This document shows, piece after piece, positions 14 through 14,210 of a stretch of 64,000 nt of DNA. A program made the translations under genes and the position numbers. Numbering within the stretch: position 1 is the stretch's first letter; each line of letters begins with the position of its first letter. The notes beneath the pieces are model-generated. The model was given only the letters and a program-made list of their open reading frames with translations. It ran no database searches and was not told where the DNA came from. The stretch spans positions 1-64,000 of IMG/VR virus record IMGVR_UViG_3300017917_000952. One strand, given 5' to 3'.

Positions 14-40
14 AATAGGCCCTTCGGGGCCTATTTTTTT
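14..40 (+). terminator. Rho-independent terminator
   Basis: AATAGGCCC-TTCG-GGGCCTATT stem with a C(UUCG)G tetraloop, followed by a T7 run. Confidence 0.9.
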
Positions 41-97
41 GGTTAAAATAATTTCAATAGTGCCATCTCCTTCTGTTTTCATGTGTTAAATATGCAC

Positions 98-1477
98 ATG
101 GCAAACTTAGGAAATTTAATCAAGCTCAATCGCAACCAATCGAAGGTCGCTATTATTGACGAAGATGCTCGCGTAACCTATAGACAATTGCATAATATGT
201 CTAACTATGCCGCATTTCATCTCAAATCAAAAGGTATTGCACCCGGTGACAGAGTAGCCATTAAAGGTGTTAATACCATAGGCTATGTAGCGGCATATTT
301 AGGAATTTTAAAACTAGGAGCCGTAGCGGTTCTCATAAATGTAAAACTTCCACAATCGCAGGTTGAGTTTATTTTAAAAGACAGCAATGTTAAATTTTTA
401 TGGGAAGATCCAAAAATCCCTAGCGATGTGTTTGTTGAATTTACTCCACACGAAGCTCAGGACAGTGACCCGGCTATTGTAATGTATACATCGGGTTCTA
501 CAAGCCAACCCAAAGGAGTCATTCTTCCGCATAGCCACAAATGGATTATTGAAAAGAAATCAAATTATCCGGCGGCTGTTCATAGGAGAGCGATTGTTGC
601 CGCACCATTATATCATATGAATGGCCTAAGCAATACCGAAACTACACTAAGCGGCCACGGTACTCTTATTCTTTTAAAAAGATTTGACCCGATACAATTC
701 TTAAAAAGAATAGCCTACCACCGAGTAAATTCTATTACATCTGTTCCTACGATGTTGGCATTGATACTTCAACATCAAGATGTAATGAAAAAATTAGATC
801 TAAAATGTGTTACACATATTGGAATGGCTTCTGCACCTGTTAGCAGACATTTATTTGAATCTCTAAAGGCTGCATTTCCAAAAGCAGTAATCAACAATGC
901 TTATGGAATAACTGAAGTTAGTCCGGGAATGTTTGGAAGGCATCCGACTCTACCCACGCCCGATATGAGTGTTGGATATCCAATACCTGGAATTGAATAT
1001 AGGCTAGTAGACGGAATTCTACAGGTAAAGAGTCCATCTATGTTCTTAAAATATAATAACCTAGCAACAAAAAACATAACCGAAGATGGGTTTTTTATCA
1101 CAAATGATTTGTTCAAAATAGACGAAAACGGGTTTTACTTTTTCTTAGGCCGCGCCGATGACATGTTTGTTAGCGGCGGGAATAATGTATACCCCCGTCA
1201 ATTAGAGTCAGTATTAGAAGAACACCCGTTAGTCAAACAAGCGGCAGTCATTGGCCTAGAAGATGATATTAAGGGGATGAAACCGTACGCATTTGTGGTA
1301 TCTACTGCCGGCGAGGACGAACTAAAAAGACATGTATTAGAATCGTTGCCGCCGAGTCATTGTCCTAGAAAAATTTGGTCGGTTATGACGATGCCACTAA
1401 CCAGCGTAAACAAAATAGATAAAAATGCACTAAAGAATCAAGCAAAAGAGTTATTAAATGTTGTTCAACAGAATTGA
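98..1477 (+). CDS. AMP-binding acyl-CoA synthetase (adenylate-forming enzyme)
   Basis: YTSGSTSQPKG AMP-binding loop, YGITE, FITNDL, GRADD and C-terminal NKIDK lysine. Start placed at ATG 98, 5 nt after TTAAATA (track start 83). Confidence 0.9.
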   Translation: MANLGNLIKLNRNQSKVAIIDEDARVTYRQLHNMSNYAAFHLKSKGIAPGDRVAIKGVNTIGYVAAYLGILKLGAVAVLINVKLPQSQVEFILKDSNVKFLWEDPKIPSDVFVEFTPHEAQDSDPAIVMYTSGSTSQPKGVILPHSHKWIIEKKSNYPAAVHRRAIVAAPLYHMNGLSNTETTLSGHGTLILLKRFDPIQFLKRIAYHRVNSITSVPTMLALILQHQDVMKKLDLKCVTHIGMASAPVSRHLFESLKAAFPKAVINNAYGITEVSPGMFGRHPTLPTPDMSVGYPIPGIEYRLVDGILQVKSPSMFLKYNNLATKNITEDGFFITNDLFKIDENGFYFFLGRADDMFVSGGNNVYPRQLESVLEEHPLVKQAAVIGLEDDIKGMKPYAFVVSTAGEDELKRHVLESLPPSHCPRKIWSVMTMPLTSVNKIDKNALKNQAKELLNVVQQN

Positions 1478-2195
1478 GAATCTTAACGGTCAGGTAGCCG
1501 TAATTACCGGAGCCAACGGCGGTGTCGGGTTTGCTGTTGCAGAAAGACTAGCAAAGTCGGGTGCTCAGATTATCGGAATAGTTAGACGCAACGTAGAAGA
1601 AATGCAGGCAAGGTTAGATCAACTAGGGCCAGGTCATAGAGCCCTATTAGCGGATGTAACTAGCAGCGAACAATTAATATCGGCGGCGGCCCAGATCACA
1701 CAGTGCGATATACTTATTAATAATGCCGGCGCTTCTACTCCTATCGATCATAAAAATTTAACCTCGCTGACGGACGAAATTTTTGAAAACGTAGTAAAGG
1801 TTAATCTAAACGGCGTATTTTACACTACTAAGGCATTTTTACCTCTCCTACGAAAGAGTCAGAATGCACTGGTTGTTAATATAAGTTCGGCTAGTAGTAT
1901 ACGAACAGGCGGCAGCAATGTTGCCTATGCAGCCGCAAAAGCAGGGGTTGACTCATTGACTAGAAATTTAGCAAAGGCCCTTGCTCCAATTAGAGTAGTA
2001 AGTTTAAATCCTACACTTATAAAAACTAATTTTACACAAATGCCAGACTCTTATTACCATAACGCAGGTCTAGGAACTCCATTAAAACGAGTAGTTACTG
2101 TAGAAGATGTTGCATCAACTGTAGAGGCACTGGCAACTACAGTGAGATTTGTAACCGGCAACAACATTGTCATTGACGGAGGAAGAACACTATGA
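1458..2195 (+). CDS. Short-chain dehydrogenase/reductase (SDR)
   Basis: TGANGGVG Rossmann motif, NNAG, catalytic S and YAAAK, IDGG C-terminus. Confidence 0.92.
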   Translation: MLFNRIENLNGQVAVITGANGGVGFAVAERLAKSGAQIIGIVRRNVEEMQARLDQLGPGHRALLADVTSSEQLISAAAQITQCDILINNAGASTPIDHKNLTSLTDEIFENVVKVNLNGVFYTTKAFLPLLRKSQNALVVNISSASSIRTGGSNVAYAAAKAGVDSLTRNLAKALAPIRVVSLNPTLIKTNFTQMPDSYYHNAGLGTPLKRVVTVEDVASTVEALATTVRFVTGNNIVIDGGRTL

Positions 2196-3064
2196 CTACA
2201 ATTATAACCTGTGCTATAACAGGAGCGGTCACTAGTAGAGATCAAACTCCGTATCTTCCAGTGACTCCTGAAGAGATTGCAATTAGCGCACTTGAAGCAG
2301 CAGAAGCCGGCGCGGCAGTAGCGCACATACATGTTCGAGATCCCGAAACAGGAAAACCGAGTATCAATGTAGAGTACTACAGAGATACAGTTGATAGAAT
2401 TCGTAAACAAAATAAAGACCTTTTGATTAACTTAACGACTGGGCCTGGCGCATTTTATTTGCCAAGTTTTGGTGTTAACCTAGCACAAGGTGCTCCAGGA
2501 ACTTTACTACTAGGCGCCGCAAAACGTGTAGAGCATATTCAGTTAATTAAACCCGATATCTGTAGTTTAGATTTTAATACCATGCATCAGGCCGGAGACG
2601 GTATCAGAATAAACCATAAACGTGTTACTAGAGAAATGCTAAGGTTAGTTCAAGAAGCAGGTACGAAACCAGAGTTAGAGATCTTTGATAGCGGAGACCT
2701 TCGCATAGCACAAGAGTTTGTTGCAGAAGGATTGGTAAAAGGTAAACCATTTTGGCAATTTGCCATGGGCGTTAAATATGGCTGGGGCGCAAGCACCAAT
2801 GCACTACAATATGCTTACAGAGAACTAACACCGGGATCGTTGTGGAGTGCCTTTGGCATAGGAAAAGAACAGATGCCATTTGTTGCACAGACAATGTTGT
2901 TAGGTGGGCATGTTAGGGTAGGCATGGAAGATAATATCTACACCAGTAAGGGAGTGTTAGCAAAAACTAATGCAGAATTGGTTAGTATGGCCGTTGACAT
3001 TATCAGACTATTAGGAGGCAAGGTTGCATCCTATCAAGAAGCAAGGGAAATTTTATTACAATGA
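2192..3064 (+). CDS. Beta-keto acid cleavage enzyme (BKACE/Kce, DUF849)
   Basis: ITCAITGA start, PVTPEEIA, AGAAVAHIHVRD zinc motif, PELEIFD, GGHVRVGMEDN. Confidence 0.9.
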   Translation: MTTIITCAITGAVTSRDQTPYLPVTPEEIAISALEAAEAGAAVAHIHVRDPETGKPSINVEYYRDTVDRIRKQNKDLLINLTTGPGAFYLPSFGVNLAQGAPGTLLLGAAKRVEHIQLIKPDICSLDFNTMHQAGDGIRINHKRVTREMLRLVQEAGTKPELEIFDSGDLRIAQEFVAEGLVKGKPFWQFAMGVKYGWGASTNALQYAYRELTPGSLWSAFGIGKEQMPFVAQTMLLGGHVRVGMEDNIYTSKGVLAKTNAELVSMAVDIIRLLGGKVASYQEAREILLQ

Positions 3065-3843
3065 CACAAGAAAGATTAGATACTAGACAGTCCTATTTCT
3101 ACAGGGATCATACCGGGATACGAAGAAGATACGGAATATACATGCCTGCTATTGATAGATTCCTGCATGTGTCAGAACAAGATTTATGGATGAGTCTCGA
3201 AACTGCTGAGATTCTAAGTTCCAAAGTACAAACTATGCTATATGTGCTGCCCCCTGGTTACATAAAAGTTCCCGAGTATACCGAACTTATTAATAATCAA
3301 AACTGTCTCAATTGGGGCATCTATGACAAGTCAAAATTAAAGATAGGTTCCGGCAGTGCGCTAGGTGCCAGACAGACTCCTATTATAGGTATGCTTTATC
3401 CTGATGATCGATTAGAAGAACATCAGTCTCTTCCAGAAGACTTTATCGAAGATAGTTCTATACTAATAGGTTTGAAAGACTATGCAGATTATGTATATCG
3501 AAGAGTTTTAGGAATTAGCATTGCAGTGAATTTTTATAATCCGTATTTCTCAAAGAAATTTATAGAAAAATATATCGACAATGATTGGGTAGAAAATAAA
3601 GAAAATTCAGCAGACCCTTCCTTTTCAAAAGGTATTGAATTTGAAATTAAGAAAATACTTTACCAGTGCAACTCTAAGGAAGAAGCCGAAGAAGCAATTA
3701 CTAATTTCTGGCTCGAAAATTATAGAAACGTAGGATTTATTATGGTAGGATATTATAAGGTAATCGGAGAAAGAATCCCAGAAAAACTAAGACCATACGC
3801 TTCAAATATTCACTATCTTAACCATTCAGTGTGGGTCATATAA
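3061..3843 (+). CDS. Hypothetical protein, coupled to the downstream PP-loop ATPase gene
   Basis: 260-aa ORF overlapping both neighbours; no motif recognised. Confidence 0.7.
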   Translation: MTQERLDTRQSYFYRDHTGIRRRYGIYMPAIDRFLHVSEQDLWMSLETAEILSSKVQTMLYVLPPGYIKVPEYTELINNQNCLNWGIYDKSKLKIGSGSALGARQTPIIGMLYPDDRLEEHQSLPEDFIEDSSILIGLKDYADYVYRRVLGISIAVNFYNPYFSKKFIEKYIDNDWVENKENSADPSFSKGIEFEIKKILYQCNSKEEAEEAITNFWLENYRNVGFIMVGYYKVIGERIPEKLRPYASNIHYLNHSVWVI

Positions 3844-5102
3844 TGCTTAATATAAACGATACACTTTATTTTTCAAGCCATGTTGTGAATTGGTATACTA
3901 GAGATACTTGGGATAAGGTATACAAAAACGTCCCTCCAGACGGTCAATGGTACCTAAAGGTGTACGAAAAGGTCTTACCTAATCGATTAATAACAAGGAA
4001 TGGGGAGTGGACTACTCCGTGGCCCCAGGAACTAATTCCTAAATTTAAGATGCCCGAGTACGATCCTTACTTTAGTAAATCGTTCGAACAGGTGACAGAT
4101 GAAAACGCTCTACGGATAAGGGATAGAATTCTCCAAGGAGAAAAGTTTGCCGTCATGTATTCGGGGGGTATTGATAGTACACTAGTTCTTTCATCGTTGA
4201 TTAAAAATCTTAGCAGTGAAGAATTAGAAAATGTAACTGTAGTTTGTAGTGGAGAAAGCATTGCCGAGAACCCTGTGTTCTATAGTAAGTTCATTCACGA
4301 AAAAATGAAAACCCTAGATTCTAAACGACACAAATATGATGACCTGATTAATCTAGGTTTGACTCCTATTATTTCAGATGAAGGAGATTGTATTTTTGGA
4401 ACACTTATCGGGCTCAATATGTACAACAGTTTTGATGCCTTAGTTGATCACGTATCGGGTCCCGTAAAAGAAAATCTAAGGCTTCTAAAAGATAAAATTA
4501 GCGATCCCAGTGTTCATTACAGTACATTTAAAGACCTAATTATTAAATTTTTGGATTTACCGCATTCACCGACATTTGGTAGAATTCTGTACGACAAATA
4601 TGATCATAATATAAGAACTGCAACAGTTCCTGTTCATAGTCTCCATGATTTTTTCTGGTGGTTAATTTTCAACGTTAAATATTACAATTGTTCCGTTAGG
4701 GGTGCAATATATATCAACGATACTATAGATATCAACACAGCCGTTCACAGAATCCATAATTGGTTTAATGATGAAGATTACCAACGATGGAGTATGGCAA
4801 ACAATAACAATGGAACAAAAATTAAAAAAAGTATCCTCAGTTATAAAACGGCGGCTAAAGAATATATCTACTCCGTTGATAACAATATTTGGTACAGAAC
4901 CTTTAAGACAAAATTAGAGTCCCTGTGGAATATAAGTAACTTGCAAAATGTACAGAATATTCCGATGGAAAAAAGGCCTGTAGCAAGGATAGCAGTTAAA
5001 AAAGAAAACTGGGAATTGGTGCATCTTACTGACCCGGGGGTGGTTGAGTATTTTACTCATCATGCATCAAATTATAAAATAGATTGGACAGACATCAAAT
5101 GA
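3831..5102 (+). CDS. PP-loop ATPase (asparagine synthase C-domain / adenine nucleotide alpha-hydrolase-like)
   Basis: MYSGGIDST PP-loop and SDEGDCIFG; no N-terminal glutaminase Cys. Confidence 0.7.
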   Translation: MGHIMLNINDTLYFSSHVVNWYTRDTWDKVYKNVPPDGQWYLKVYEKVLPNRLITRNGEWTTPWPQELIPKFKMPEYDPYFSKSFEQVTDENALRIRDRILQGEKFAVMYSGGIDSTLVLSSLIKNLSSEELENVTVVCSGESIAENPVFYSKFIHEKMKTLDSKRHKYDDLINLGLTPIISDEGDCIFGTLIGLNMYNSFDALVDHVSGPVKENLRLLKDKISDPSVHYSTFKDLIIKFLDLPHSPTFGRILYDKYDHNIRTATVPVHSLHDFFWWLIFNVKYYNCSVRGAIYINDTIDINTAVHRIHNWFNDEDYQRWSMANNNNGTKIKKSILSYKTAAKEYIYSVDNNIWYRTFKTKLESLWNISNLQNVQNIPMEKRPVARIAVKKENWELVHLTDPGVVEYFTHHASNYKIDWTDIK

Positions 5103-6004
5103 AAAAATTTTTAGCAACCTTATTATTAGCAACTACAGCATTTGTGGCACATGCTAAAGAAAATATTACAATTTTCTATGCATGGGGTCCAGGTGACTCT
5201 GTAGCAAACTATCATCGCACTATCGCTGCTGAAGCAAACAAAATTCAAGACAAATACAATTTTATCTTTGATACCAAGCCAGGCGCAGGTGGTGCAATCG
5301 CATCTAACCACGTACTTAATACTCCTAACAGTGTATTGGCACATAGCACAGCATTTTTTGTGCGTCCTGTAGTGTTCCCTAACGAAAGTTATGATTTAAC
5401 AAAATACAAAGAACAATATGTTCACTGCATGGCCCCAATGGCTGTGACTAGTACAAAGTATAAAACTGTAAAAGATGTACCTGCCAACGCTAGTGTAGGT
5501 ATTAGCGGCCTAGGTGTTACTACACACTTAGCAGCACTAGAACTAAAGAAACGTTATCCGGATTTAAATATCGTTCCTTTTAAATCTACCAACGATAGTA
5601 TGTTAAGTATGGTAAGCGGTCAAACTGATCTACATATTGGATTTATCAGCGAAGCAGAACAATGGAGTAAAGAAAACTCTAACAGTGATCGTAAGGTAAA
5701 TGTTTTAGGTATTACTGGATCAAAAGTTGTTAATGGTTACCAACCGTTGGTTCGTCAAGGCTTCGACGCTAGTTTTGCCGACATGAATGTTGGACATCAT
5801 CTCCTAGTACCAACAACAGTCAGCGAAGAAAAGCGCAAAGAGTTTCACGCCATTTTTGCTCGTGCAGCCCAGGCTCCTAGCGTTCGTGCTGCCTATGCAG
5901 TTGACTACTGCGAACCACAGGCTGTTACCTATGACGGTTTAGACAAGTTCTTCTTGTTCCATACAAACTATTGGAAGAAGTTAGCATCTGCGGTTAAACT
6001 ATGA
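5084..6004 (+). CDS. Bug/TctC-like tripartite tricarboxylate transporter substrate-binding protein
   Basis: Signal peptide (MKKFLATLLLATTAFVAHA, likely start about 5099), KPGAGGAIA, GVTTHL, VPFKS. Confidence 0.8.
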   Translation: MDRHQMKKFLATLLLATTAFVAHAKENITIFYAWGPGDSVANYHRTIAAEANKIQDKYNFIFDTKPGAGGAIASNHVLNTPNSVLAHSTAFFVRPVVFPNESYDLTKYKEQYVHCMAPMAVTSTKYKTVKDVPANASVGISGLGVTTHLAALELKKRYPDLNIVPFKSTNDSMLSMVSGQTDLHIGFISEAEQWSKENSNSDRKVNVLGITGSKVVNGYQPLVRQGFDASFADMNVGHHLLVPTTVSEEKRKEFHAIFARAAQAPSVRAAYAVDYCEPQAVTYDGLDKFFLFHTNYWKKLASAVKL

Positions 6005-6894
6005 TTAAGAAATTAATTATTGGAGTTCTAGGGGCATTGGCTATTTCGGCCAATGCTGCCGAAACTATTAAGGTATACAGTCCTTACAGTGCGAGCCACA
6101 GCGGTACTCCTGCATTGTTACGAGTGTTAGACCAAGCAAACGCAAATCAAAATATCTATAAATTCGTTCCAGAATTTAAACCGGGCGGAAATCAGATCAT
6201 CGCTGTAAAAAGTGTAGATGCAAATAGCCTGGCAATTATTGCACCTGCGTTTGTTGAGAATGTAGAATCGGGTAAACTTAATGAGTCTGACTATGTTCCA
6301 GTTTATGCACTCGGTGATGCCTGCTGGGCTGTGATCACAAACGGACCTTTAGAAGGTGCTAAGGAAGTTACAGTCGGCGGGGTTGGATTTGGCAATGCTG
6401 CACACTTAACAGCACTAGCATTAGGCGAGAAGTTTAAGTTTAACGTTCGTTATATTGTTTTTAGATCTAACAACGATGCACTGGTTAACATGACTGGAAA
6501 CAACGGTGTAGAATTTGTTGTTGAAAAATACGAAAGTTACGAAGGATTAAAAACTAAAAATCCTAATCTAAGAGTTATTGCTGCTAGTTGTCCTAAGAGA
6601 TTACCCCAGGCACCAAAAGTAAAAACACTCAAGGAAATGGGAATAGAAGCACCCTATGTCTTCAACATCATTGTATCTAACAGAGAAATGCCCAGTGGTC
6701 GTAGGTTAGCAATTTCAAAAATCTTAAATGACGCTACTCTAGCACTAGGCGAAGAAGAAATTTTTAAAATCTCTGCAATGCGTCCTCCTGTGTTCGATGG
6801 TGTCACTGCTGAAGATTTTTATGTAAAATCTACAGATCTTGTCAAAAATCTTCAGAAAAAGTATAGGTCTAAGATTGAAGAATCCAAAAAGTAA
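6001..6894 (+). CDS. Bug/TctC-like substrate-binding protein (divergent)
   Basis: Signal peptide ...AISANA, KPGG, GFGNAAHL, KRLPQAPKVKTLKEMG. Confidence 0.75.
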   Translation: MIKKLIIGVLGALAISANAAETIKVYSPYSASHSGTPALLRVLDQANANQNIYKFVPEFKPGGNQIIAVKSVDANSLAIIAPAFVENVESGKLNESDYVPVYALGDACWAVITNGPLEGAKEVTVGGVGFGNAAHLTALALGEKFKFNVRYIVFRSNNDALVNMTGNNGVEFVVEKYESYEGLKTKNPNLRVIAASCPKRLPQAPKVKTLKEMGIEAPYVFNIIVSNREMPSGRRLAISKILNDATLALGEEEIFKISAMRPPVFDGVTAEDFYVKSTDLVKNLQKKYRSKIEESKK

Positions 6895-6931
6895 CTAAAT
6901 ATATGAGCATGAAAGGTTCATGCTCATTTTT
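6895..6931 (+). terminator. Terminator hairpin directly downstream of a late-promoter-like CTAAATA
   Basis: ATGAGCATGAA-AGG-TTCATGCTCAT (6903-6927) plus T run; CTAAATA at 6895-6901. Confidence 0.75.
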
Positions 6932-6956
6932 AACGTTATAAAATGGAGCCTAAACA

Positions 6957-7904
6957 ATGACAAAAAAGCACGTAAAATGGGTTATCGCCCATGAGCCTAT
7001 TGGATTATTCCTAAAGGTAGCAGAGCGTTTTGCTAAGGAAGTAAACGAGCAGACCAACGGTATGTTCGATATCGAAGTTCTTTCTCTAAGCGATTATTCT
7101 GCAAAGTACAATGATGGTAAGAAAATTACCAAAGACGACCTAATGAAGTTAGTAGATACTGGCGCAATCGAAATGAGCCACATCTACACAACATGGTTAG
7201 CAGACTACAACAAAGATCTACACGCATTAGATCTACCTTTCTTATTCCGTGATCACGCACACGCTGACGCAGTTCTAGAAGGCGAAATCGGTGCAGAGCT
7301 TCTAGCAGGTGTTTCTAAGAACAGCAACATCAAGGCTATGAGTTTCACATATAGCGGTGGCTATCGTGTTGTTCCTGCAAACTTTGCAGCAGACACAGTA
7401 GAAGCATGGCAAGGTAAGAAAGTTCGTACCAGCCGTAGCCCAGTTGCAGTCGACACATTCAAACTGCTAGGCGCACAACCTTTTGAAGGTATTGCTTTAG
7501 AAGAAATGAATCAGGCTGCTGACCAAGGTATTATTGAAGCAGGCGAGAGCACATACGTTCGCGTATTCCCTCTAGACCAGCATAAGAGCTTCGAAGTTGT
7601 TAACGACACAGCACACAGCCTATTCTTAACAAGCATTATTGTTAACCAAGATTTCATGGCTCAGTTCAGCCAAGAAGTTCAAGAAGTTCTTGCAACAGCC
7701 GCATTCAATGCAGCACGTCAAGAGCGTCGCGAAAGTGTTGCTAACATTCCTGAAATCCTAGAACTTTGCGAAAAAGAAGGTGTTCAGGTTGTTAAGATGA
7801 GCGCAGAAGAAGAGTGCAAGTTCAAGGCAATCACAAGTCAGGTTTATGACATGTATGCCGACTATTTCACTCCCGGCTTAGTCCAGAAGATTCAGTTACA
7901 GTAA
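6957..7904 (+). CDS. dctP: TRAP transporter DctP-family substrate-binding protein lacking a signal peptide
   Basis: FAKEVNEQTNG, ALDLPFLFRD, GKKVRT with the conserved Arg, GIIEAGE; GGAG RBS at 6945-6948. Confidence 0.85.
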   Translation: MTKKHVKWVIAHEPIGLFLKVAERFAKEVNEQTNGMFDIEVLSLSDYSAKYNDGKKITKDDLMKLVDTGAIEMSHIYTTWLADYNKDLHALDLPFLFRDHAHADAVLEGEIGAELLAGVSKNSNIKAMSFTYSGGYRVVPANFAADTVEAWQGKKVRTSRSPVAVDTFKLLGAQPFEGIALEEMNQAADQGIIEAGESTYVRVFPLDQHKSFEVVNDTAHSLFLTSIIVNQDFMAQFSQEVQEVLATAAFNAARQERRESVANIPEILELCEKEGVQVVKMSAEEECKFKAITSQVYDMYADYFTPGLVQKIQLQ

Positions 7905-7921
7905 TCTGTACTTAATCAAGT

Positions 7922-7942
7922 AAAGGGCCATATGGCCCTTTT
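7922..7942 (+). terminator. Terminator / perfect 20-bp palindrome
   Basis: AAAGGGCCAT|ATGGCCCTTT just after the dctP stop. Confidence 0.8.
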
Positions 7943-7957
7943 CTTACGAGTATACCC

Positions 7958-7965
7958 TATAAATA
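7958..7965 (+). promoter_or_regulatory. T4-type late promoter TATAAATA
   Basis: Exact T4 late consensus, 4 nt before ATG 7970. Confidence 0.65.
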
Positions 7966-7969
7966 ATTC

Positions 7970-8569
7970 ATGTGGATGCCTGTTGATTTTAAAGAAATTG
8001 GAAAAATAGATCCGGAAATATTAAATCCGGTTATAGAACTATTTGATACAATAAACTGGAATGATTTTTCATACAGACGTCCAGAACCTAAACTGCGTGC
8101 CGGAAAATTACTGGCTTTGCCTTACCTGTTATACAAATATGATCATCCTGTTTATACCGAAGAGCAGCAGATGATAATTAAGGCCGTGGAACCAGTAGTA
8201 GATGAGATTATTAAACTATTCCCCGGTTATGTAAAAGTTCGCGGAGAAATTGCAACATTATTACCGGGGGTTGAATTACCTTTACATACTGATATTGTTT
8301 GGTTTCATAAGTATTGTAGGCGAATACACATTCCTATAATAACTAACAAGGACTGTTACCAACAATTTGAAAATAGAACTTCTCATTTAGAGTTTGCAAA
8401 AATATACGAGATTAATAATAGAATAATGCACGGTGCTGGTAATCTCGGAAACAGCCAACGCATACACTTAATCCTTGACTTGCTCAGTGACAACATCTAT
8501 AATATAATTGATAAAAAAGTATATCAACTTATGACGGCGCTGCCAAAAAATGAAGTCAAAATTTATTAA
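7970..8569 (+). CDS. Aspartyl/asparaginyl beta-hydroxylase-like 2OG-Fe(II) oxygenase
   Basis: LPLHTD (HxD), RRIHIPIITN, EINNRIMHGAGN, RIHLILD. Confidence 0.8.
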   Translation: MWMPVDFKEIGKIDPEILNPVIELFDTINWNDFSYRRPEPKLRAGKLLALPYLLYKYDHPVYTEEQQMIIKAVEPVVDEIIKLFPGYVKVRGEIATLLPGVELPLHTDIVWFHKYCRRIHIPIITNKDCYQQFENRTSHLEFAKIYEINNRIMHGAGNLGNSQRIHLILDLLSDNIYNIIDKKVYQLMTALPKNEVKIY

Positions 8570-9098
8570 CGCATATATGAATGTGGCAAAAGAGTTTGCC
8601 AATCTAAGCCATGCACGACGATTACACGTCGGTGCTATTGTAGTCAAAGACGACCGTATCATCAGCATCGGCTACAACGGTATGCCTGCCGGTTGGGATA
8701 ACGACTGTGAATACAAAGATTACTGCCTAAGCAAAGATCTCAATGGAAATTATTTTCCAGGGGCGGAAGAAGAATATCCGTTTGTAGAAGAAGAACACGG
8801 TCCATATTACGAGTATACTCGTCGGTACCGTCTTAAAACCAGACCAGAGGTATTACATGCAGAATCAAACGCTATTGCAAAACTGGCGAAGTCTAATGAC
8901 AGTGGTGATGGGGCTGACTTATTTGTTACTCACAGTCCTTGTATCGAGTGTGCCAAACTCATTTATCAGTCAGGCATTCGTCGTGTTTATTTTGGTGAAC
9001 ACTATCGCGACGATGCTGGGATTGAATTCCTCAAGAAGTCGGGCGTGGAGGTAGTACAACCCCAACTAGGTGAATCCGAGGAACCTCAGAGCAATTAA
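8550..9098 (+). CDS. dCMP deaminase
   Basis: VGAIVVKD, GYNG, HAESNAI and SPCIECAK zinc motifs. Confidence 0.93.
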   Translation: MKSKFINAYMNVAKEFANLSHARRLHVGAIVVKDDRIISIGYNGMPAGWDNDCEYKDYCLSKDLNGNYFPGAEEEYPFVEEEHGPYYEYTRRYRLKTRPEVLHAESNAIAKLAKSNDSGDGADLFVTHSPCIECAKLIYQSGIRRVYFGEHYRDDAGIEFLKKSGVEVVQPQLGESEEPQSN

Positions 9099-9570
9099 TA
9101 AATGTGTGCTTCTTTGTTGTATCTACATAGTAACTAGTGCCGTCAGCGGGCATGTGCTCTATAGAATTCTGTTCCGGAAAAATCATTAAACATTGGGGAT
9201 TAGTAATCACTGGTAAATGTATCCTAGGATACGGATCAGAATGTATGCTGTAGCAGGCCCTGGGATTCATGTACATTAATCTTGTTCTAACAATCCTATA
9301 CTCACTAAGTGATTGCAACCATTGATCAACAAAACCGCCCCGTAGTTTAGGGTGAATAAATTTATACTGGGGCTCTACTATCATTCCTCCGGTTTTTCTT
9401 ATTCTGCCGGTTGACTCGTAGAACTGCTCTATGCTATCATTGTTAGGATCTTTCACCTGCAGGCCTAACTGCATAACGTTTTCTCTAAACGGAAAATTTT
9501 TGATTAGGTCGTTTATTTCGCTAACTAAGTTATAGAAATTCTCAAACTTCTTGATAGGCGTACAGATCAT
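9031..9570 (-). CDS. Aspartyl/asparaginyl beta-hydroxylase-like 2OG-Fe(II) oxygenase
   Basis: YSIHSD, RIHLPVITN, DTTKKHTFIN, RIHLV. Start placed at 9570, 5 nt after TTAAATA on the minus strand. Confidence 0.75.
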   Translation of the reverse strand: MICTPIKKFENFYNLVSEINDLIKNFPFRENVMQLGLQVKDPNNDSIEQFYESTGRIRKTGGMIVEPQYKFIHPKLRGGFVDQWLQSLSEYRIVRTRLMYMNPRACYSIHSDPYPRIHLPVITNPQCLMIFPEQNSIEHMPADGTSYYVDTTKKHTFINCSEVPRIHLVGVVLPPRPTS

Positions 9571-9609
9571 ATCAATATTTAATAACATTCTAACATAAGG
9601 AAAAAATAG

Positions 9610-10536
9610 ATGAACTTAAAACCCCTAGTTGCAGCACTAGTTACTGCATTTACACTTCAAGTCGGCATTGCTAATGCAGAATTTAATCCTGTAGGTAAAC
9701 AGGTTAATGTTATCATTCCGTTTGCGCCAGGCGGCGGAGTAGATCAGACATTTAGACATCTTCAGACTTATGCTTCAAAGAAAGGCGTTAATCTTGTCGC
9801 AATTTATAAACCGGGTGCAGAAGGGCTGATCGCAATGAGCGAATTAGTTACCAAACCTGCAGACGGAATGACCGTTAGTGTTACTACAGCAGGCGTTATT
9901 GCCAATTACCGATTAAAGAATCCGTCTACAGATGTAGTTGCTATCTCTGGTATTCGAGACAGTATCATGGCCTTGGTTGTTAGTAATAAGAGCCAAATTG
10001 AAAGTCTAGACCAATTAGACAAAGATCTTAAAGAAGGTAAAAAACTAAATGTAGGATATGGTGCACCAGGGCAGCAGATGTTCTTAGAGCAGTTCTTTGA
10101 ATTAGCAAAGGCAAAGAAAGGCGTTGCCATGGTTCCTTATAAGGGCGGCGGGCCGGTTGTTACTGACCTACTAGGCGGGCATATTGATGTTGCAGCAGTA
10201 CCGTTATCAATTGTTAAGGCACATATCGATTCTGGAAAAGTAAAATTAGTAGGATTAGCCAGCAGAGCAAAGATAGAAGGTTATGATTCTACTCCGCTAA
10301 TGAAGGCCAAGTATCCAAAATGGGAAGAGTTTGATAACTTTGCAGTTGTTGCCGAAAAAGGCACAGACAAAGAAGCCATTAATTGGTGGTCTAATTTCTT
10401 AAAAGATTATATCAATGACGAATCTGTTAAGAAGGATTTTGTCAAAGACATGACTGTACCTGTCGAGTTTGGTGCAACTAACCTAGAAAAAACAATTCAG
10501 TCTAGCATGAATAGACTTAAAAAGAATGGAAATTAA
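9610..10536 (+). CDS. Bug/TctC substrate-binding protein
   Basis: Signal peptide, IIPFAPGGGVD, KPGAEG, VPYKGGGPVVTDLLGGHID. Confidence 0.9.
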   Translation: MNLKPLVAALVTAFTLQVGIANAEFNPVGKQVNVIIPFAPGGGVDQTFRHLQTYASKKGVNLVAIYKPGAEGLIAMSELVTKPADGMTVSVTTAGVIANYRLKNPSTDVVAISGIRDSIMALVVSNKSQIESLDQLDKDLKEGKKLNVGYGAPGQQMFLEQFFELAKAKKGVAMVPYKGGGPVVTDLLGGHIDVAAVPLSIVKAHIDSGKVKLVGLASRAKIEGYDSTPLMKAKYPKWEEFDNFAVVAEKGTDKEAINWWSNFLKDYINDESVKKDFVKDMTVPVEFGATNLEKTIQSSMNRLKKNGN

Positions 10537-11290
10537 AAAATTTACAGACCGTGTAAAGTACAAGAGTTTACCCCCGGACTTTAATCATCAAAACGGGGTA
10601 AACTTTCAAAGTTCTTACGAATACACAAAAACATTCAGTAACTATCATTTTAACAAATGGGTTGTTGAAGGCGACGGCGACTGGTATCATTCATTAGGCC
10701 GATTTGAAGGCGACTGGACTGCCGACGTTGAAAAAATTATTGAAAAGAGTAAAGAACTAAGTTGGGATCAAAGCACTAAGTCAGGACTTCGACCGGGATT
10801 CAAAGGCGGACAGAGTCCCATGAAAGCGCAGGAAGAATACGATCGCGCCCAACACGGACTTGATAAGGTAGATCAAACTAATTTAGTTCTTGAGGATTTT
10901 TTAGATCAATTTCCTACTATCAAGAAAATGATAGATTACTGGGAACTAGAAAAGGTAAGTTATCGGGCACACGTTCAATGGCCTGGACAATGCTTCGGTG
11001 TTCATATTGACAAATTGTGGCATAGGTGTCCGGAAGATCCTAGCCGTATTGTAAGACTTATTCTTAATCTAGCAGACTATGAACCTGGTCAGGTAATTCT
11101 TTACGGTAACAGTGTGCTAACGCAATGGCATGCCGGAGACATTCATATTTTTGATACACTAAACGTTCCTCACGGTACATTTAATCTAAGCACTAGTCCA
11201 CGACCTAATATTACAATAACTGGTCTTAGAACTGAGGCCACTGACCGTAAATTAGCAGCAGCAAACAAAGATTCAAGATATCAAATATGA
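10526..11290 (+). CDS. 2OG-Fe(II) oxygenase / cupin-like protein
   Basis: HVQWPGQCFGVHID (HxD), QWHAGD, NVPHGTFN, ITITG. Confidence 0.6.
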   Translation: MEIKKFTDRVKYKSLPPDFNHQNGVNFQSSYEYTKTFSNYHFNKWVVEGDGDWYHSLGRFEGDWTADVEKIIEKSKELSWDQSTKSGLRPGFKGGQSPMKAQEEYDRAQHGLDKVDQTNLVLEDFLDQFPTIKKMIDYWELEKVSYRAHVQWPGQCFGVHIDKLWHRCPEDPSRIVRLILNLADYEPGQVILYGNSVLTQWHAGDIHIFDTLNVPHGTFNLSTSPRPNITITGLRTEATDRKLAAANKDSRYQI

Positions 11291-11859
11291 CTCCCTACGA
11301 GCCCTTGAATATATGGTTGCCCGAAGATCTTCCTCTATATCAAAAATATAAAGATCTAAAATATAGACAGGTAGATACTGGAGCATATGAAATAGATAAA
11401 ACTTTTGAACGGGCAGGCCTTTCTATGAAAGAGTTTGAATCTGTTCCTGCCTTACTTGATCTTATAAAAAAATATAAGATGTTGTCAAAAGTGTTTATGC
11501 TATTGCCTAACACCACGTATAATTGGCATGTTGACGCATTTAGGTACGTAGCATTTAATTGTCTACTTACTACAGACGACTCTAACTATCTTACTTTGTT
11601 TTGCGATGAATTAGAAAAATATAATCTTGTATACTTCAAAACTAAAAGATTAGTATATGAACCAAGAAGATTTTATTTGTTTAACACACAGGTTCCTCAC
11701 ATAATAACAAATTATAGCGACAAACCTAGATATCTAATTTCTATTGCACCCTACTTTGCAGAAAAAATTTCTAATGAAAACATTAAAGCCACTGATAGAA
11801 ATTTTTCTACATATCTTAAAATTGTCGAAGAATTAAAACTACAAGGCCTGATAAATTAA
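11287..11859 (+). CDS. 2OG-Fe(II) oxygenase-like protein
   Basis: YNWHVD (HxD), LFNTQVPH distal His, RYLIS. Confidence 0.6.
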   Translation: MTPYEPLNIWLPEDLPLYQKYKDLKYRQVDTGAYEIDKTFERAGLSMKEFESVPALLDLIKKYKMLSKVFMLLPNTTYNWHVDAFRYVAFNCLLTTDDSNYLTLFCDELEKYNLVYFKTKRLVYEPRRFYLFNTQVPHIITNYSDKPRYLISIAPYFAEKISNENIKATDRNFSTYLKIVEELKLQGLIN

Positions 11860-11862
11860 ATT

Positions 11863-13293
11863 ATGCAGATTGTAATTTTAACCGGCGGAACTGATAACCG
11901 AAGATTTCTAAGGTACTTAGGTCCTTATCAAATAGCATGGTGGATGCGTGAACATGGATATTCTGTTCAGGTACTAGATTTTTTATTTTTTCTTCCTAAG
12001 GTGGAGAGAATAAATCTCCTAAGAAAATTTATAACAAAAGAAACAAAAGTAGTTTCAGTTGCCCCCTTTGCATACTTGGACTGGCATCACGACAGTGCTC
12101 TGGCTCCTATTATAAGTTTATTCCAAGACATAAAATACGAATTTCCTTGGGTCAAAATATCTGTAGGCGGGCAGTTTGCTACTAATTTTTTAAAGAAAAA
12201 AGTTTATACAAGACTAAAGTATAAGGTTGATGCAGTATTCCAAGGACCAGGAGAACATTCTTATCTAGACTATTGTAACTACATTTTTGGAAAGTCAGAT
12301 AAACACCCGGCATTCAAACTTATAGATGACCATAAAGTATTCGAATCCTCAGTAGAGTATGATGTACAAAACTGTAGAATGAGATTTTCTACTCAAGATT
12401 TTATTCTACCCGGAGAAGCATTACCAATCGAATTAAGTCGTGGATGTATTTTCAAATGTGCATTCTGTCAGTATCCTAACTTAGGCAAAGACAAAGACGA
12501 CTTCAACAGGAAGATTGAGAATATCCGAGATACCATGATTCATAATTATGAAAATTTCGGGACCACAGAATATTACATAGCAGACGATACAATTAACTCA
12601 CATAGGCAACGGACTAAAGATCTGCACGAAATGTCTAAAACATTACCTTTCAAATTAAATTACATAGGGTATGTAAGATTAGACCTGTTAGACATTTGGC
12701 CCGAGCAGCAAGAGATATTGCCAGAGTCGGGACTGGTTAGTTGCCACTTTGGAATAGAATCACTAGATCCTTACTCTTGCAAACAGATAGGCAAAGGTTG
12801 GGGAGCGAAGAATCACAAAATATGGATTCCTAAGATCGCAGAAATGTGGAAAGATACTGTGTCAATAAGATGTTCATTAATTGCAGGCCTTGGGAAAGAA
12901 ACAGAAAAAGACTGGAATGAAACAATGGAGTGGTTTAAAACTACCGGTGTAAAAGATTGGTTCTATAACCTACTGGTCCTAAGGAAAGAAATTGACCTAA
13001 GTCTTTTTGAAAAGAATCCCGAAAAGTACGGTTACAAATTTGATAGCAAAGGTAATTGGTATACAGATACAATGACCTATTATAGAGCAAAGGAATGGCA
13101 AACACTTAACTACTATAGTAATCTGTCTTTAAGATATGCTACCACATGGGATTACATAGGACTAAGAAACTTAGGATTCAGCAAAGAACAACTTAATACT
13201 GAAAAGTTTGGGTCCATGATTAAAGCCGTTGCAGCAAGAACTCAAGCCCGAGACTTTGCTAAACGTTACTACCAACTGGCAATGAGTTATTAA
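11863..13293 (+). CDS. B12-binding radical SAM protein
   Basis: SRGCIFKCAFC CxxxCxxC motif, N-terminal cobalamin-binding-like domain (ISVGG), DDT, GIES, LIAGL. Confidence 0.85.
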   Translation: MQIVILTGGTDNRRFLRYLGPYQIAWWMREHGYSVQVLDFLFFLPKVERINLLRKFITKETKVVSVAPFAYLDWHHDSALAPIISLFQDIKYEFPWVKISVGGQFATNFLKKKVYTRLKYKVDAVFQGPGEHSYLDYCNYIFGKSDKHPAFKLIDDHKVFESSVEYDVQNCRMRFSTQDFILPGEALPIELSRGCIFKCAFCQYPNLGKDKDDFNRKIENIRDTMIHNYENFGTTEYYIADDTINSHRQRTKDLHEMSKTLPFKLNYIGYVRLDLLDIWPEQQEILPESGLVSCHFGIESLDPYSCKQIGKGWGAKNHKIWIPKIAEMWKDTVSIRCSLIAGLGKETEKDWNETMEWFKTTGVKDWFYNLLVLRKEIDLSLFEKNPEKYGYKFDSKGNWYTDTMTYYRAKEWQTLNYYSNLSLRYATTWDYIGLRNLGFSKEQLNTEKFGSMIKAVAARTQARDFAKRYYQLAMSY

Positions 13294-14210
13294 GGCAGTT
13301 TGCCGTCTTTTAGATATTTAGAAAAGCACAATCTATTAGATCCTGTTCCTCGATTGTACTCTGTAAACTTATCTGTAGAAGTTGCGAAAAATACACACTT
13401 AGTCGGATTCACTCCTAACTGATCACTAAACATTTCCTGAGTATTTCTATAGGTATTATAGTTGTAATCGGGACTGTATTTTTCAATTAGTTTTTCACCA
13501 ACAGCGGCTCCTAAACGATTTACATATTTGTTTTTGTTGTAAACAAACAAAGGATCATCATTATCTAGTCGTGTTAACCTCATTCCTATTCTAAGATGTT
13601 GTACAGGAAAGTTTTTGCTTAGACTAAAAACTATTTCTTCAATACATTGATAATTAAAATCAAATTTTACATTACCGCATACACCAAAATAGCAACAGTC
13701 TACTAATACAGGAACATTTAGTTTTTCACAGACAGATAAAATATCTTCCATTAAGGGATTTTCTGCTCCGTTATCGGCGAAAGGTAAACTAAAAATTACA
13801 ACATCGTCTGCACGGATAGCATCGTCTTCGATAACTGCAACTCTATCAAAGTATGCTTTACCTGATGCAATGTGATACATGTACTCGCCTTTGAAATAAC
13901 GAAGGCGACGTTCTTTATGTTTTAGATAAAATTTATCAAATGCTTCCGTTGTTCCGTTACTGAAAGCAAAGGCATTGAAATTTTCTAGTCCTGCAATTTG
14001 ATTGTTCTTTGTTGATAAGATCCATTCTTTATATTTTCTGCAGAACCGATCGTGAACTTCAACATCATTTAAGCAACCTTCGGCAACAACAGTATTAATA
14101 ATACCTGCAACTTCTTGTTCTAGTTCTTCGTTTTTTACACAATGTACGCTACCGAAGGGTAGGCTTTTTAATTTTAACAGTGCATTCCACTGTTCTTCTT
14201 TTTGAGTCAT
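13290..14210 (-). CDS. PLP-dependent fold-type I enzyme (aminotransferase/decarboxylase-like)
   Basis: GTTEAFD, VLVDCCY (PLP Asp), FSLSKNF (Schiff-base Lys), LRIGMR. Confidence 0.65.
   Translation of the reverse strand: MTQKEEQWNALLKLKSLPFGSVHCVKNEELEQEVAGIINTVVAEGCLNDVEVHDRFCRKYKEWILSTKNNQIAGLENFNAFAFSNGTTEAFDKFYLKHKERRLRYFKGEYMYHIASGKAYFDRVAVIEDDAIRADDVVIFSLPFADNGAENPLMEDILSVCEKLNVPVLVDCCYFGVCGNVKFDFNYQCIEEIVFSLSKNFPVQHLRIGMRLTRLDNDDPLFVYNKNKYVNRLGAAVGEKLIEKYSPDYNYNTYRNTQEMFSDQLGVNPTKCVFFATSTDKFTEYNRGTGSNRLCFSKYLKDGKLP

What the first reader, a model, noticed from the sequence alone, without database searches (positions are those of the whole stretch)
5084..10536. Four orphan solute-binding proteins with no transporter membrane subunits
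Seen: three Bug/TctC proteins with signal peptides and one DctP, but no TctA/TctB or DctQ/DctM gene in the 64 kb. Known: these proteins normally deliver carboxylates to those permeases. Bug genes are greatly expanded, and often orphan, in Burkholderiales. Inference: the phage re-tunes host uptake by docking its binding proteins on host permeases, scavenges a pathway precursor, or blocks sensing or receptors. It also suggests a betaproteobacterial host.
Basis: partly seen in the sequence, partly recalled or inferred. Interest (0 to 1): 0.7.

Follow-up and report, generated by a model that had tools for sequence, protein, structure and literature searches.

The report
Orphan solute-binding proteins in aquatic phages
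A large pond phage carries four transporter-type binding proteins and no transporter; three look exported and could use the host's permease, but the fourth has no export signal, must stay in the cytoplasm, and is kept almost unchanged next to an amide-forming enzyme in many unrelated aquatic phages.

Summary
Window 5084-10536 encodes one canonical TctC/Bug protein, a tandem pair of very divergent TctC-fold proteins, and one full-length TRAP DctP-fold protein. No TctA, TctB, DctQ or DctM is found in the 206.7-kb record. None is found in seven complete or near-complete related phage genomes either.

The interpretation needs splitting. The three TctC-type proteins have Sec-type leaders, so docking on a host TctAB permease (as assumed for cyanophage PstS) is plausible. 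The DctP has no leader: an in-frame TAA lies two codons upstream, and 0 of about 120 orthologue clusters have one. It cannot reach a periplasmic permease face.

None of the four looks like a recent host pick-up. Each belongs to a phage-borne clade found in T4-like myophages and PA5oct-like jumbo phages. Each SBP type sits beside a stand-alone AsnB-type PP-loop synthetase that adenylates carboxylates. Radical-SAM and AspH-like oxygenases also recur. Here there is also an acyl-CoA ligase/SDR/BKACE trio, whose closest cellular relatives are Comamonadaceae operons served by Bug proteins.

My best reading is that the SBPs are the capture arm of a phage carboxylic-acid processing module. The ligand, the host and any physical partnership remain unproven.

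The parts
83..1477 (+). AMP-forming acyl-CoA ligase, first gene of the module. A strong hairpin with a T-run lies at 14-35 just upstream.
   Evidence: PF00501 3e-59 and PF13193. NCBIfam gives generic fatty-acyl/aryl-CoA ligase matches, all below equivalog cut-offs. Hairpin.
1458..2195 (+). Short-chain dehydrogenase/reductase (hydroxy-acid to keto-acid type).
   Evidence: PF13561/PF00106 about 1e-42. 44-49% identical to the SDR immediately upstream of BKACE in 63 of 76 mostly Comamonadaceae loci.
2192..3064 (+). Beta-keto acid cleavage enzyme (BKACE/DUF849).
   Evidence: PF05853 1.7e-94. Below every NCBIfam equivalog cut-off, so the substrate is unknown. Best cellular relatives are Comamonadaceae at 55-59%.
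3061..3843 (+). Unknown 260-aa protein (P0006) that travels with the PP-loop gene and the SBP.
   Evidence: Homologues lie directly upstream of the PP-loop gene in L005, L031, L039, L058 and L163, and more distantly in L083 and L084. No family or fold match.
3831..5102 (+). Stand-alone AsnB-type PP-loop synthetase (P0005; SGGIDS motif) with no glutaminase domain. Its TGA stop overlaps the ATG of the next gene (ATGA).
   Evidence: Motif seen. AF2 model pLDDT 94.8. VIA-align Z 13.1 to TsnB9, 12.9 to beta-lactam synthetase, 11.8 to carbapenam synthetase and 11.7 to human ASNS, all to their synthetase domains. 975 50%-identity representatives at E<=1e-3. Atlas clusters are 94% viral. Overlap.
5099..6004 (+). 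Divergent exported TctC-fold protein no. 1 (P0001). The canonical PFAPGGGVD loop reads AWGPGDSVA.
   Evidence: PF03401 20.2 bits over profile positions 16-269. Profile-profile match 97.4%. More than 120 clusters at 78-94% identity, about 301 aa each. Leader.
6001..6894 (+). Divergent exported TctC-fold protein no. 2 (P0002), tandem paralogue about 22% identical to no. 1. ATGA overlap with no. 1; hairpin at 6903-6927 downstream.
   Evidence: PF03401 27.8 bits. Alignment A2. Profile evidence. Overlap. Hairpin.
6957..7904 (+). Leaderless, hence cytoplasmic, TRAP DctP-fold protein (P0003).
   Evidence: PF03480 5e-40. In-frame TAA at 6951-6953. AF2 pLDDT 94.3, TM 0.84-0.92 to mature periplasmic TRAP SBPs over the full length. 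53 IMG/VR loci at 63-87% identity. More than 120 clusters at >=81% identity, 314-316 aa. None has a leader.
7970..8569 (+). AspH-like cupin oxygenase (HxD...H).
   Evidence: PF05118 6e-8; motif. Recurs beside phage TctC genes (cluster 3).
8550..9098 (+). dCMP deaminase, probably a bystander nucleotide-metabolism gene. It recurs near TctC in 7 loci.
   Evidence: PF00383 1.3e-22 and phrog_174 1.7e-53. Recurrence.
9031..9588 (-). AspH-like cupin oxygenase.
   Evidence: PF05118 3.8e-5; motif.
9610..10536 (+). Canonical exported TctC/Bug protein (P0004) with intact PFAPGGGVD and PYKGGGP loops.
   Evidence: PF03401 1.2e-21. PDB BugE 2dvz 3e-18 and AdpC 7ndr 1e-17. In the phage clade 110 of 122 members have leaders. 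Invariant residues.
10526..11290 (+). Cupin-like 254-aa protein (P0245) whose start overlaps the TctC stop.
   Evidence: HxD...H motif. Directly follows TctC in 13 loci. Atlas neighbours are AspH-like and viral.
11287..11859 (+). Cupin-like 190-aa protein (P0246).
   Evidence: HxD...H motif. Cluster 9 recurs with TctC.
11863..13293 (+). Radical SAM enzyme of about 476 aa.
   Evidence: PF04055 1e-11. Cluster 6 recurs beside phage TctC.
13290..14210 (-). Unknown 306-aa protein ('cl.4') that travels with TctC and the second PP-loop gene.
   Evidence: 15 loci. No family match.
14210..15337 (-). Second PP-loop (SGGxDS) protein, 375 aa, the usual companion of phage TctC.
   Evidence: Cluster 1 in 18 of 24 TctC loci. 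No Pfam match.

Best explanation
The four genes are the substrate-capture arm of a phage-borne module that processes a carboxylic acid, probably a keto-, hydroxy- or dicarboxylic acid.

Shown:
- All four are real SBP-fold proteins.
- Three have Sec-type leaders and one has none.
- No permease is encoded here or in complete relatives.
- Each SBP type is genetically coupled to an AsnB-type PP-loop synthetase. That class adenylates a carboxylate and makes an amide.

Inferred:
- The exported TctC-type proteins bind the acid in the periplasm and pass it to the host's own TctAB permease. Orphan Bug proteins do this in Burkholderiales, and cyanophage PstS is thought to do the same with host PstCA.
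- Inside the cell the leaderless DctP holds the same or a related acid, by the TRAP-type arginine clamp, for the PP-loop synthetase.
- The ligase, SDR and BKACE convert the acid or its relatives into CoA esters and acetoacetate.
- The end product is unknown. It could be a metabolite, or a modification made with the radical-SAM and AspH-like enzymes.
For: Fold and family.

Leaders: 110 of 122 phage TctC proteins have an N-terminal hydrophobic leader, against 0 of about 120 DctP orthologue clusters. An in-frame stop lies upstream of the DctP start.

Orphan status: own record. Five complete T4-like genomes, one complete 168-kb genome and one 98%-complete 353-kb genome lack TctA and DctM, while six of the seven carry TctC-type genes.

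Linkage of SBP and PP-loop genes:
- An ORF with the PP-loop motif is the immediate neighbour of DctP in 36 of 46 loci, in two different genomic contexts.
- A roughly 380-aa PP-loop protein accompanies TctC in 18 of 24 loci.
- The PP-loop stop and the P0001-type SBP start overlap by 4 nt, here and in the 373-kb relative L163.

PP-loop enzyme: it is an AsnB-type synthetase domain, Z 11.7-13.1 to TsnB9, beta-lactam synthetase, carbapenam synthetase and ASNS.

Module recurrence: ligase, SDR, BKACE, PP-loop and leaderless DctP recur in shuffled order in L083 and L084 at only 41-65% identity.

Cellular parallel: in Comamonadaceae the SDR-BKACE pair sits within 1.5 kb of a Bug gene in 48 of 76 loci.

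Full transporter in one lineage: a T4-like lineage (L044/L045) places the leaderless DctP directly after a full dctQ-dctM-dctP(with leader) operon and two PP-loop genes. This ties it to imported carboxylates.

Conservation: DctP is 68% identical between phages whose terminases are 30% identical. Arg137 and 100 other positions are invariant.
Against: - No ligand, transport or expression data exist. No RNA run was listed as holding the region.
- The host is unknown, so whether it has TctAB is unknown.
- P0001 and P0002 have lost the canonical Bug carboxylate-clamp loop. They may bind something else or nothing.
- The DctP has many invariant His, Glu and Asp residues. This is more than a plain binder needs and could point to catalysis or a protein interface.
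- The PP-loop partner is only about 24% conserved while DctP is about 80% conserved. That is odd for a fixed complex.
- Eight of 46 DctP loci show no PP-loop ORF within three genes; in two of them (L044, L045) PP-loop genes lie four or more genes upstream.
- Gene linkage in hypervariable phage islands can also reflect co-transfer rather than a shared pathway.
Confidence: 0.45

Rival explanations
1. Plain nutrient-uptake boosters. All four proteins simply add binding capacity to host TTT and TRAP permeases to raise carbon uptake during infection, with no tie to the neighbouring enzymes.
For: Three proteins carry leaders and there is no permease. Orphan Bug proteins that share one TctAB are the norm in Burkholderiales, and cyanophage PstS is a precedent (own knowledge). 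Pelagimyophages carry transport AMGs, including a TctA-family gene (PMC7029224 Table S5).
Against: The DctP has no leader in any orthologue. The tight, rearrangement-proof linkage to PP-loop genes is left unexplained. P0001 and P0002 lack the canonical clamp loop.
Confidence: 0.17
2. The leaderless DctP is no longer a binder for transport. It is an SBP-fold enzyme or obligatory enzyme subunit, as happened to other SBP folds. The exported TctC-likes are unrelated passengers.
For: Conservation is extreme: 79% mean column identity, with invariant H12, E13, H75, H100, H102, E197, D217 and H220. The location is cytoplasmic. It neighbours PP-loop and radical-SAM genes.
Against: The model superposes on ordinary TRAP SBPs at TM 0.84-0.92 with no extra domain. 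The family arginine is kept. I did not map the invariant residues onto the cleft.
Confidence: 0.15
3. Metabolite sponge or decoy. The cytoplasmic DctP sequesters a host metabolite or signal (for example 2-oxoglutarate or a carboxylate-bearing immune signal). The exported proteins starve or mask a host sensor or receptor.
For: A leaderless, high-copy binder is what a sponge would look like. Many 2-oxoglutarate-dependent oxygenases are nearby. The protein spreads across unrelated phages.
Against: Nothing links it to defence loci or sensors. I ran no search against the PADLOC library. Linkage to a carboxylate-activating enzyme suggests use of the ligand rather than removal.
Confidence: 0.08
4. 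Artefact: cellular DNA mis-called as viral, or a chimeric contig, so that these are ordinary host SBP genes.
For: The ligase, SDR and BKACE resemble bacterial operons. Two related loci are filed under bacterial MAGs.
Against: The same record holds tail-fibre-like genes and a T4-type terminase 54% identical to that of phage PA5oct. The cluster is syntenic in independent assemblies (L058, L163). The SBP clades sit among tail-fibre, VrlC, neck and terminase genes in complete genomes with terminal repeats. G+C is even across the window.
Confidence: 0.02

Closest known systems
Cyanophage PstS (phage-encoded phosphate-binding protein without PstCAB)
   Same: An exported solute-binding protein is encoded by a phage with no membrane subunits. 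It is presumed to use the host permease. It is common in aquatic T4-like phages (own knowledge; listed as an AMG in PMC7029224 Table S5).
   Different: It belongs to a different transporter class (ABC rather than TTT/TRAP) and binds a different ligand. PstS is not coupled to a PP-loop enzyme. No leaderless PstS is known to me.
Orphan Bug/TctC proteins of Burkholderiales (BugD, BugE, Bug27; AdpC of Rhodopseudomonas)
   Same: P0004 shares the fold, the leader and the PFxxGGxxD / PYKG loops. It is encoded without TctAB and lies next to catabolic genes, as in Comamonadaceae SDR-BKACE loci.
   Different: The phage proteins form their own clade at 44-98% identity, and all five sampled contigs look like phage. 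P0001 and P0002 have replaced the clamp loop. Companions are PP-loop, radical-SAM and cupin genes, not LysR regulators.
Periplasmic TRAP binding proteins (DctP, SiaP; PDB 4ovr, 4nq8, 8t9t)
   Same: Full-length structural match at TM 0.84-0.92 with 20-25% identity and the conserved arginine.
   Different: There is no signal peptide or lipobox, and no DctQM except in the L044/L045 lineage. Conservation across unrelated phages is about 80%.
AsnB-type synthetase domains (asparagine synthetase B, beta-lactam synthetase, carbapenam synthetase, TsnB9)
   Same: The partner P0005 has the SGGxDS PP-loop and matches these synthetase domains at Z 8.9-13.1.
   Different: It has no N-terminal glutaminase domain. 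Identity is 8-12%. The family is almost wholly viral. The substrate is unknown.
Transport AMGs of pelagimyophages (TctA family, lactate permease, PnuC)
   Same: These are aquatic T4-like phages with a hypervariable host-recognition cluster between VrlC and the neck gene. That cluster holds radical-SAM cassettes, asnB-like genes and AspH (PMC7029224). Many DctP loci lie in this same kind of place.
   Different: That paper lists a TctA-family permease but no TctC or DctP binding protein. The phages here have G+C of 38-42%, not 30-35%, and their VrlC is only 35-42% identical.

Membership tests
TTT solute-binding proteins (TctC/Bug, PF03401) | Sequence match to the family profile above the curated cut-off | tested here: met
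   P0004 scores 77.9 bits and P0002 27.8 bits against a cut-off of 27. P0001 alone scores 20.2 bits, below the cut-off. Its family profile matches the TctC profile at 97.4% probability, E 1.2e-11, and PDB TTT SBPs at 7e-14.
TTT solute-binding proteins (TctC/Bug, PF03401) | N-terminal export signal (periplasmic location) | tested here: met
   A hydropathy rule plus AxA-type sites give leaders for all three proteins here, and for 110 of 122 clade members; the rest are truncated. This is heuristic: no SignalP run and no experiment.
TTT solute-binding proteins (TctC/Bug, PF03401) | Carboxylate-clamp loops (PFxxGGxxD and PYKG) | tested here: inconclusive
   Intact and invariant in the P0004 clade (P37, F38, G41-43, D45, Y177, G179). 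Replaced in P0001 (AWGPGDSVA; FKSTND) and in P0002 (SPYSASHSG; FRSNND).
TTT solute-binding proteins (TctC/Bug, PF03401) | Works with TctA/TctB membrane subunits | not testable with these tools
   None is encoded in the phage or in complete relatives. The host is unknown, so a host TctAB could not be examined.
TRAP solute-binding proteins (DctP, PF03480) | Family profile match and complete two-lobe fold | tested here: met
   138 bits. AF2 pLDDT 94.3. TM 0.84-0.92 to solved TRAP SBPs across all 315 residues.
TRAP solute-binding proteins (DctP, PF03480) | Exported to the periplasm or anchored outside the membrane | tested here: not met
   There is no leader. An in-frame TAA lies at 6951-6953. All orthologues start M..KKHVKWVIAHEP. 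The protein length equals that of mature SBPs.
TRAP solute-binding proteins (DctP, PF03480) | Conserved arginine that clamps the ligand carboxylate | tested here: inconclusive
   Arg137 (SGGYR) is invariant and aligns with an Arg of 4ovr in the HMMER alignment. I did not check it in three dimensions.
TRAP solute-binding proteins (DctP, PF03480) | Encoded with or served by DctQ/DctM | tested here: not met
   Absent from the own record and from 35 of 37 related records, including 5 complete genomes. Present only in L044/L045, which also have their own exported DctP.
Phage orphan-SBP auxiliary genes (PstS type) | Exported phage SBP that raises uptake through the host permease | not testable with these tools
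   The exported proteins fit the pattern: leader present, no permease. Host and transport are untested. The DctP fails the export criterion.
AsnB-type PP-loop synthetases (partner P0005) | SGGxDS PP-loop and synthetase-domain fold; glutaminase domain | tested here: met
   SGGIDS at residues 111-116 is invariant. Z 8.9-13.1 to the synthetase domains of TsnB9, beta-LS, CarA, ASNS and AsnB. No glutaminase domain is present, so this is a stand-alone variant.

The most novel reading that the evidence does not exclude
A TRAP-family binding protein has been taken into the cytoplasm by phages. There it serves as the substrate-holding partner, or a catalytic subunit, of a virus-specific family of AsnB-like amide synthetases. 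The pair forms a mobile two-gene unit that spreads among unrelated aquatic phages and makes a so far unknown amide-linked product. The exported TctC-type proteins are the matching periplasmic harvesters that hijack the host's TctAB.
Probability: 0.25. Interest if true: 0.8.

Novelty: new variant of a known kind. Interest (0 to 1): 0.62.

Why it matters
Phage binding proteins without permeases are known for phosphate (PstS). I found no description of TTT or TRAP binding proteins as conserved phage genes in the searchable literature. That library is incomplete.

These families are large and widespread.
- The DctP has more than 120 clusters at >=81% identity.
- The P0001 type has more than 120 clusters at >=78% identity.
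- The PP-loop partner has about 975 representatives at 50% identity, almost all viral.
- They occur in pond, lake, estuary, aquaculture and wastewater samples.

They therefore mark a common, unstudied activity of aquatic phages.

A signal-less TRAP binding protein held at about 80% identity across phages with 30%-identical terminases is unusual in itself. It gives a clean target: a soluble 315-aa protein for ligand screening. Identifying that ligand could name the chemistry of a whole block of viral 'dark matter', namely the PP-loop, radical-SAM and AspH-like genes in the host-recognition islands of T4-like phages.

Tried and rejected
- Complex prediction of P0005 with P0003 gave no answer (score 0.00, mark 0.32). 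I do not count it for or against binding.
- A 7-deazaguanine (QueC-like) reading of the PP-loop genes was not supported. No TGT/DpdA is found in the 206 kb, and the fold is closer to AsnB-type than to QueC (Z 4.4).
- The leaderless DctP is not a recent copy of the exported DctP in L044. The two show no significant BLAST similarity, and the exported one belongs to the TakP/keto-acid subgroup.
- No cultured phage in GenBank/INPHARED has a close DctP or TctC homologue. The only hits are 21-24% identical, apparently on bacterial contaminants.
- The first viral scan with P0004 alone found nothing. An alignment query found 17 loci.
- P0006 remains without fold or family.
- The sigma-70 promoter scan was at chance level.
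- No RNA run was listed for the region.
- There are no tRNA genes for host matching.
- ENA contigs (L058, L062, L163) could not be searched whole for permeases.
- NCBIfam gave no equivalog-level name for the ligase, SDR or BKACE.
- An adipate/3-oxoadipate reading rests only on AdpC being a top PDB hit for the TctC-type proteins and on a 3-oxoadipate BKACE model scoring below its cut-off. I treat it as a lead.

Full report
WHAT IS THERE

The window is the first 64 kb of a 206,751-b IMG/VR virus record. The record is linear, CheckV-estimated 58% complete, and has 41% G+C. It is a tailed phage. It has tail-fibre-like proteins. Its T4-type large terminase is 54% identical to that of Pseudomonas jumbo phage PA5oct and 47-49% identical to those of Atu_ph07 and Phosso. 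The same DNA occurs in pond, estuary, freshwater, aquaculture and wastewater metagenomes.

From base 83 to 13293 the genes run head to tail on the + strand:
- acyl-CoA ligase
- SDR
- BKACE
- an unknown 260-aa protein
- a 423-aa PP-loop protein
- two TctC-like genes
- DctP
- an AspH-like cupin
- dCMP deaminase
- a second AspH-like gene on the minus strand
- TctC
- two more cupin-like proteins
- a radical-SAM enzyme

On the minus strand follow an unknown 306-aa protein and a second PP-loop protein (13290-15337).

CHECK OF THE OBSERVATION

P0004 (9610-10536) is a canonical TctC/Bug protein. It matches PF03401 at 1.2e-21 and solved BugE and AdpC at 3e-18 and 1e-17. Its PFAPGGGVD and PYKGGGP loops are intact.

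P0002 is marginal (27.8 bits) and P0001 sub-threshold (20.2 bits, but full length). A profile of their family nevertheless aligns to the phage TctC profile over 280 columns at 97.4% probability. It also finds solved TTT proteins at 7e-14. 'Three TctC' is therefore right, although two are far from canonical and have lost the clamp loop.

P0003 is a clear DctP (5e-40). Its model (pLDDT 94.3) superposes on mature periplasmic TRAP proteins at TM 0.84-0.92 over its whole length.

The three TctC-types begin with textbook Sec leaders. The DctP does not. It starts MTKKHVKWVIAHEP, and a TAA two codons upstream excludes a longer form.

TctA, TctB, DctQ and DctM are absent from all 206 kb.

The cluster lies only 5 kb from the contig end, so I looked at relatives.
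- A near-identical 140-kb contig reaches 12 kb further upstream. The four genes called in the 4 kb fetched beyond this record's start include no permease.
- A 98%-complete 353-kb relative (TerL 61% identical) has one TctC and neither TctA nor DctM.

THESE ARE PHAGE GENE FAMILIES, NOT HOST LEFTOVERS

The DctP has orthologues at 63-87% identity in 53 IMG/VR loci. It has more than 120 protein clusters at >=81% identity, almost all 314-316 aa. None has a leader.

More than half of the loci (26 of 46) are T4-like myophages of 160-175 kb. Their VrlC is 35-42% identical to those of Synechococcus and Pelagibacter myophages. In them the gene lies in the variable island between VrlC and the tail-fibre genes. 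This is the 'host recognition cluster' described for pelagimyophages, which also holds radical-SAM cassettes (PMC7029224).

Between our jumbo phage and one such T4-like contig, DctP is 68% identical, while the terminases are 30% and the PP-loop partners 24-26% identical.

The TctC clade behaves likewise. The top 120 relatives are 44-95% identical. All five sampled contigs of this clade, including the near-identical L058, are phage-like, and 17 IMG/VR loci were found.

The P0001 type has more than 120 clusters at 78-94% identity, some on contigs of 300-374 kb.

Five complete T4-like genomes with the DctP, one complete 168-kb genome and the 353-kb genome lack TctA and DctM. Six of these seven carry TctC-type genes. 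Orphan status is therefore a stable feature.

The number of SBPs varies among close relatives: four here, three in L058, one in L163.

WHAT TRAVELS WITH THEM

- An ORF with the SGGxDS PP-loop motif is the immediate neighbour of the DctP in 36 of 46 loci, in two different genomic settings.
- The phage TctC is accompanied by a roughly 380-aa PP-loop protein in 18 of 24 loci. It is often joined by a 305-aa unknown, a 254-aa cupin, a roughly 480-aa radical-SAM enzyme and AspH-like cupins. All of these are present here at 7970-15337.
- The P0001-type gene starts inside the stop codon of the P0005-type PP-loop gene (ATGA), here and in L163.

P0005 folds with pLDDT 94.8. It matches the synthetase domains of TsnB9, beta-lactam synthetase, carbapenam synthetase and asparagine synthetases at Z 8.9-13.1, and it has no glutaminase domain. 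Established knowledge of that class says such enzymes adenylate a substrate carboxylate and form an amide. The family has about 975 representatives at 50% identity and is about 94% viral.

Both SBP families are carboxylate binders by family knowledge. The recurring pair is therefore 'carboxylate binder plus carboxylate activator'.

THE LIGASE/SDR/BKACE TRIO

The trio recurs with the PP-loop gene and a leaderless DctP (49% identical) in two further contigs. Gene order is shuffled and identity is only 41-65%. That argues for a functional unit. These two contigs are filed as bacterial MAGs but look like large phages.

The best cellular BKACE relatives (55-59%) are almost all Comamonadaceae. In those loci the SDR is immediately upstream in 63 of 76, and a Bug/TctC gene lies within 1.5 kb in 48. 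The phage module thus mirrors a bacterial catabolic operon served by a TTT binding protein.

The substrate cannot be named. BKACE scores below every equivalog cut-off.

A TELLING EXCEPTION

Two T4-like contigs (L044, L045) carry neck, T4-type terminase and sheath genes. They also encode a full TRAP system: DctQ, DctM and an exported DctP of the keto-acid (TakP) subgroup. The leaderless DctP follows directly, and two PP-loop genes precede it. The two DctPs are unrelated at BLAST level. This links the leaderless protein to imported carboxylates. It also shows that phages can carry the permease when they need one.

MECHANISM (INFERRED)

- The exported TctC-types capture an acid in the periplasm and use the host's TctAB.
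- The leaderless DctP holds an acid in the cytoplasm for the PP-loop synthetase.
- The ligase, SDR and BKACE process related keto or hydroxy acids.

I put this at about 0.45.

Rivals:
- Plain uptake boosters (0.17). This fails for the DctP and ignores the linkage.
- DctP as an SBP-fold enzyme or subunit (0.15), suggested by its many invariant His, Glu and Asp residues.
- A metabolite sponge or decoy (0.08).
- An artefact (0.02).

Complex prediction gave no answer. No RNA run was listed.

HOST

The BKACE/SDR evidence gives it weak independent support. The 41% G+C, the terminase relatives and the lack of tRNA genes leave it open.

NOVELTY

The principle of an orphan phage SBP is known from PstS. 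A TctA-family permease is listed among pelagimyophage AMGs. I found no account of phage TctC or DctP binding proteins, of a leaderless TRAP binding protein, or of their coupling to AsnB-like enzymes. The library searched is incomplete.

I rate this a new variant of a known kind, with a one-in-four chance that the cytoplasmic DctP/PP-loop pair is something truly new.

Noticed in passing
L044:5227-9117 (also L045): A T4-like phage contig encodes a complete TRAP transporter: DctQ, DctM and an exported TakP-type DctP. The leaderless DctP follows it and two PP-loop genes precede it. I know of no described phage-borne full TRAP system.
   Followed up: partly
L083 (JAIELP010000006.1, 504-kb contig) and L084 (JAYVHE010000106.1): Contigs filed under bacterial MAGs ('bacterium', 'Bdellovibrio sp.') carry the phage-type module. 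L084 also has GroEL, a radical-SAM gene and a fatty-acid desaturase, as in phage loci. They are probably mis-binned large phages.
   Followed up: partly
window 7970-8569, 9031-9588(-), 10526-11290, 11287-11859: Four AspH-like cupin (HxD...H) paralogues lie within 4 kb. Two were invisible to Pfam. AspH is reported as core to pelagimyophages (PMC7029224).
   Followed up: partly
window 14-35 and 6903-6927: A strong GC-rich hairpin with a T-run lies just before the ligase gene. A perfect 11-bp palindromic hairpin lies between TctC-like no. 2 and DctP. These suggest two transcription units.
   Followed up: no
whole record G000 (206,751 b): ARAGORN finds no tRNA gene in 206 kb of a jumbo phage.
   Followed up: no
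window 16531-17985, 20934-21953, 35028-35966: Carbamoyltransferase, a dehydrogenase (phrog_9582) and a nucleotide-sugar epimerase lie downstream. In the relative L163 the same stretch also has UDP-glucose dehydrogenase, an acyl carrier protein and GTP cyclohydrolase I. This hints at sugar or glycan chemistry nearby.
   Followed up: no
window 38702-44731: A 2009-aa ORF has a tail-protein-like C-terminus (phrog_2589) and several small repeated domains of unknown function.
   Followed up: no
L058 and L163 compared with window 5084-10536: Close relatives differ in SBP content: 4 here, 3 in L058, 1 in L163. L163 has an acetyltransferase where the DctP block sits here. The SBP set is being gained and lost quickly.
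   Followed up: partly
L085:4340-7875 (Variovorax paradoxus): The bacterial SDR-BKACE pair sits between a catechol 1,2-dioxygenase-like gene and a quinone-oxidoreductase-like gene. This hints that the cellular operon handles ring-cleavage products.
   Followed up: no
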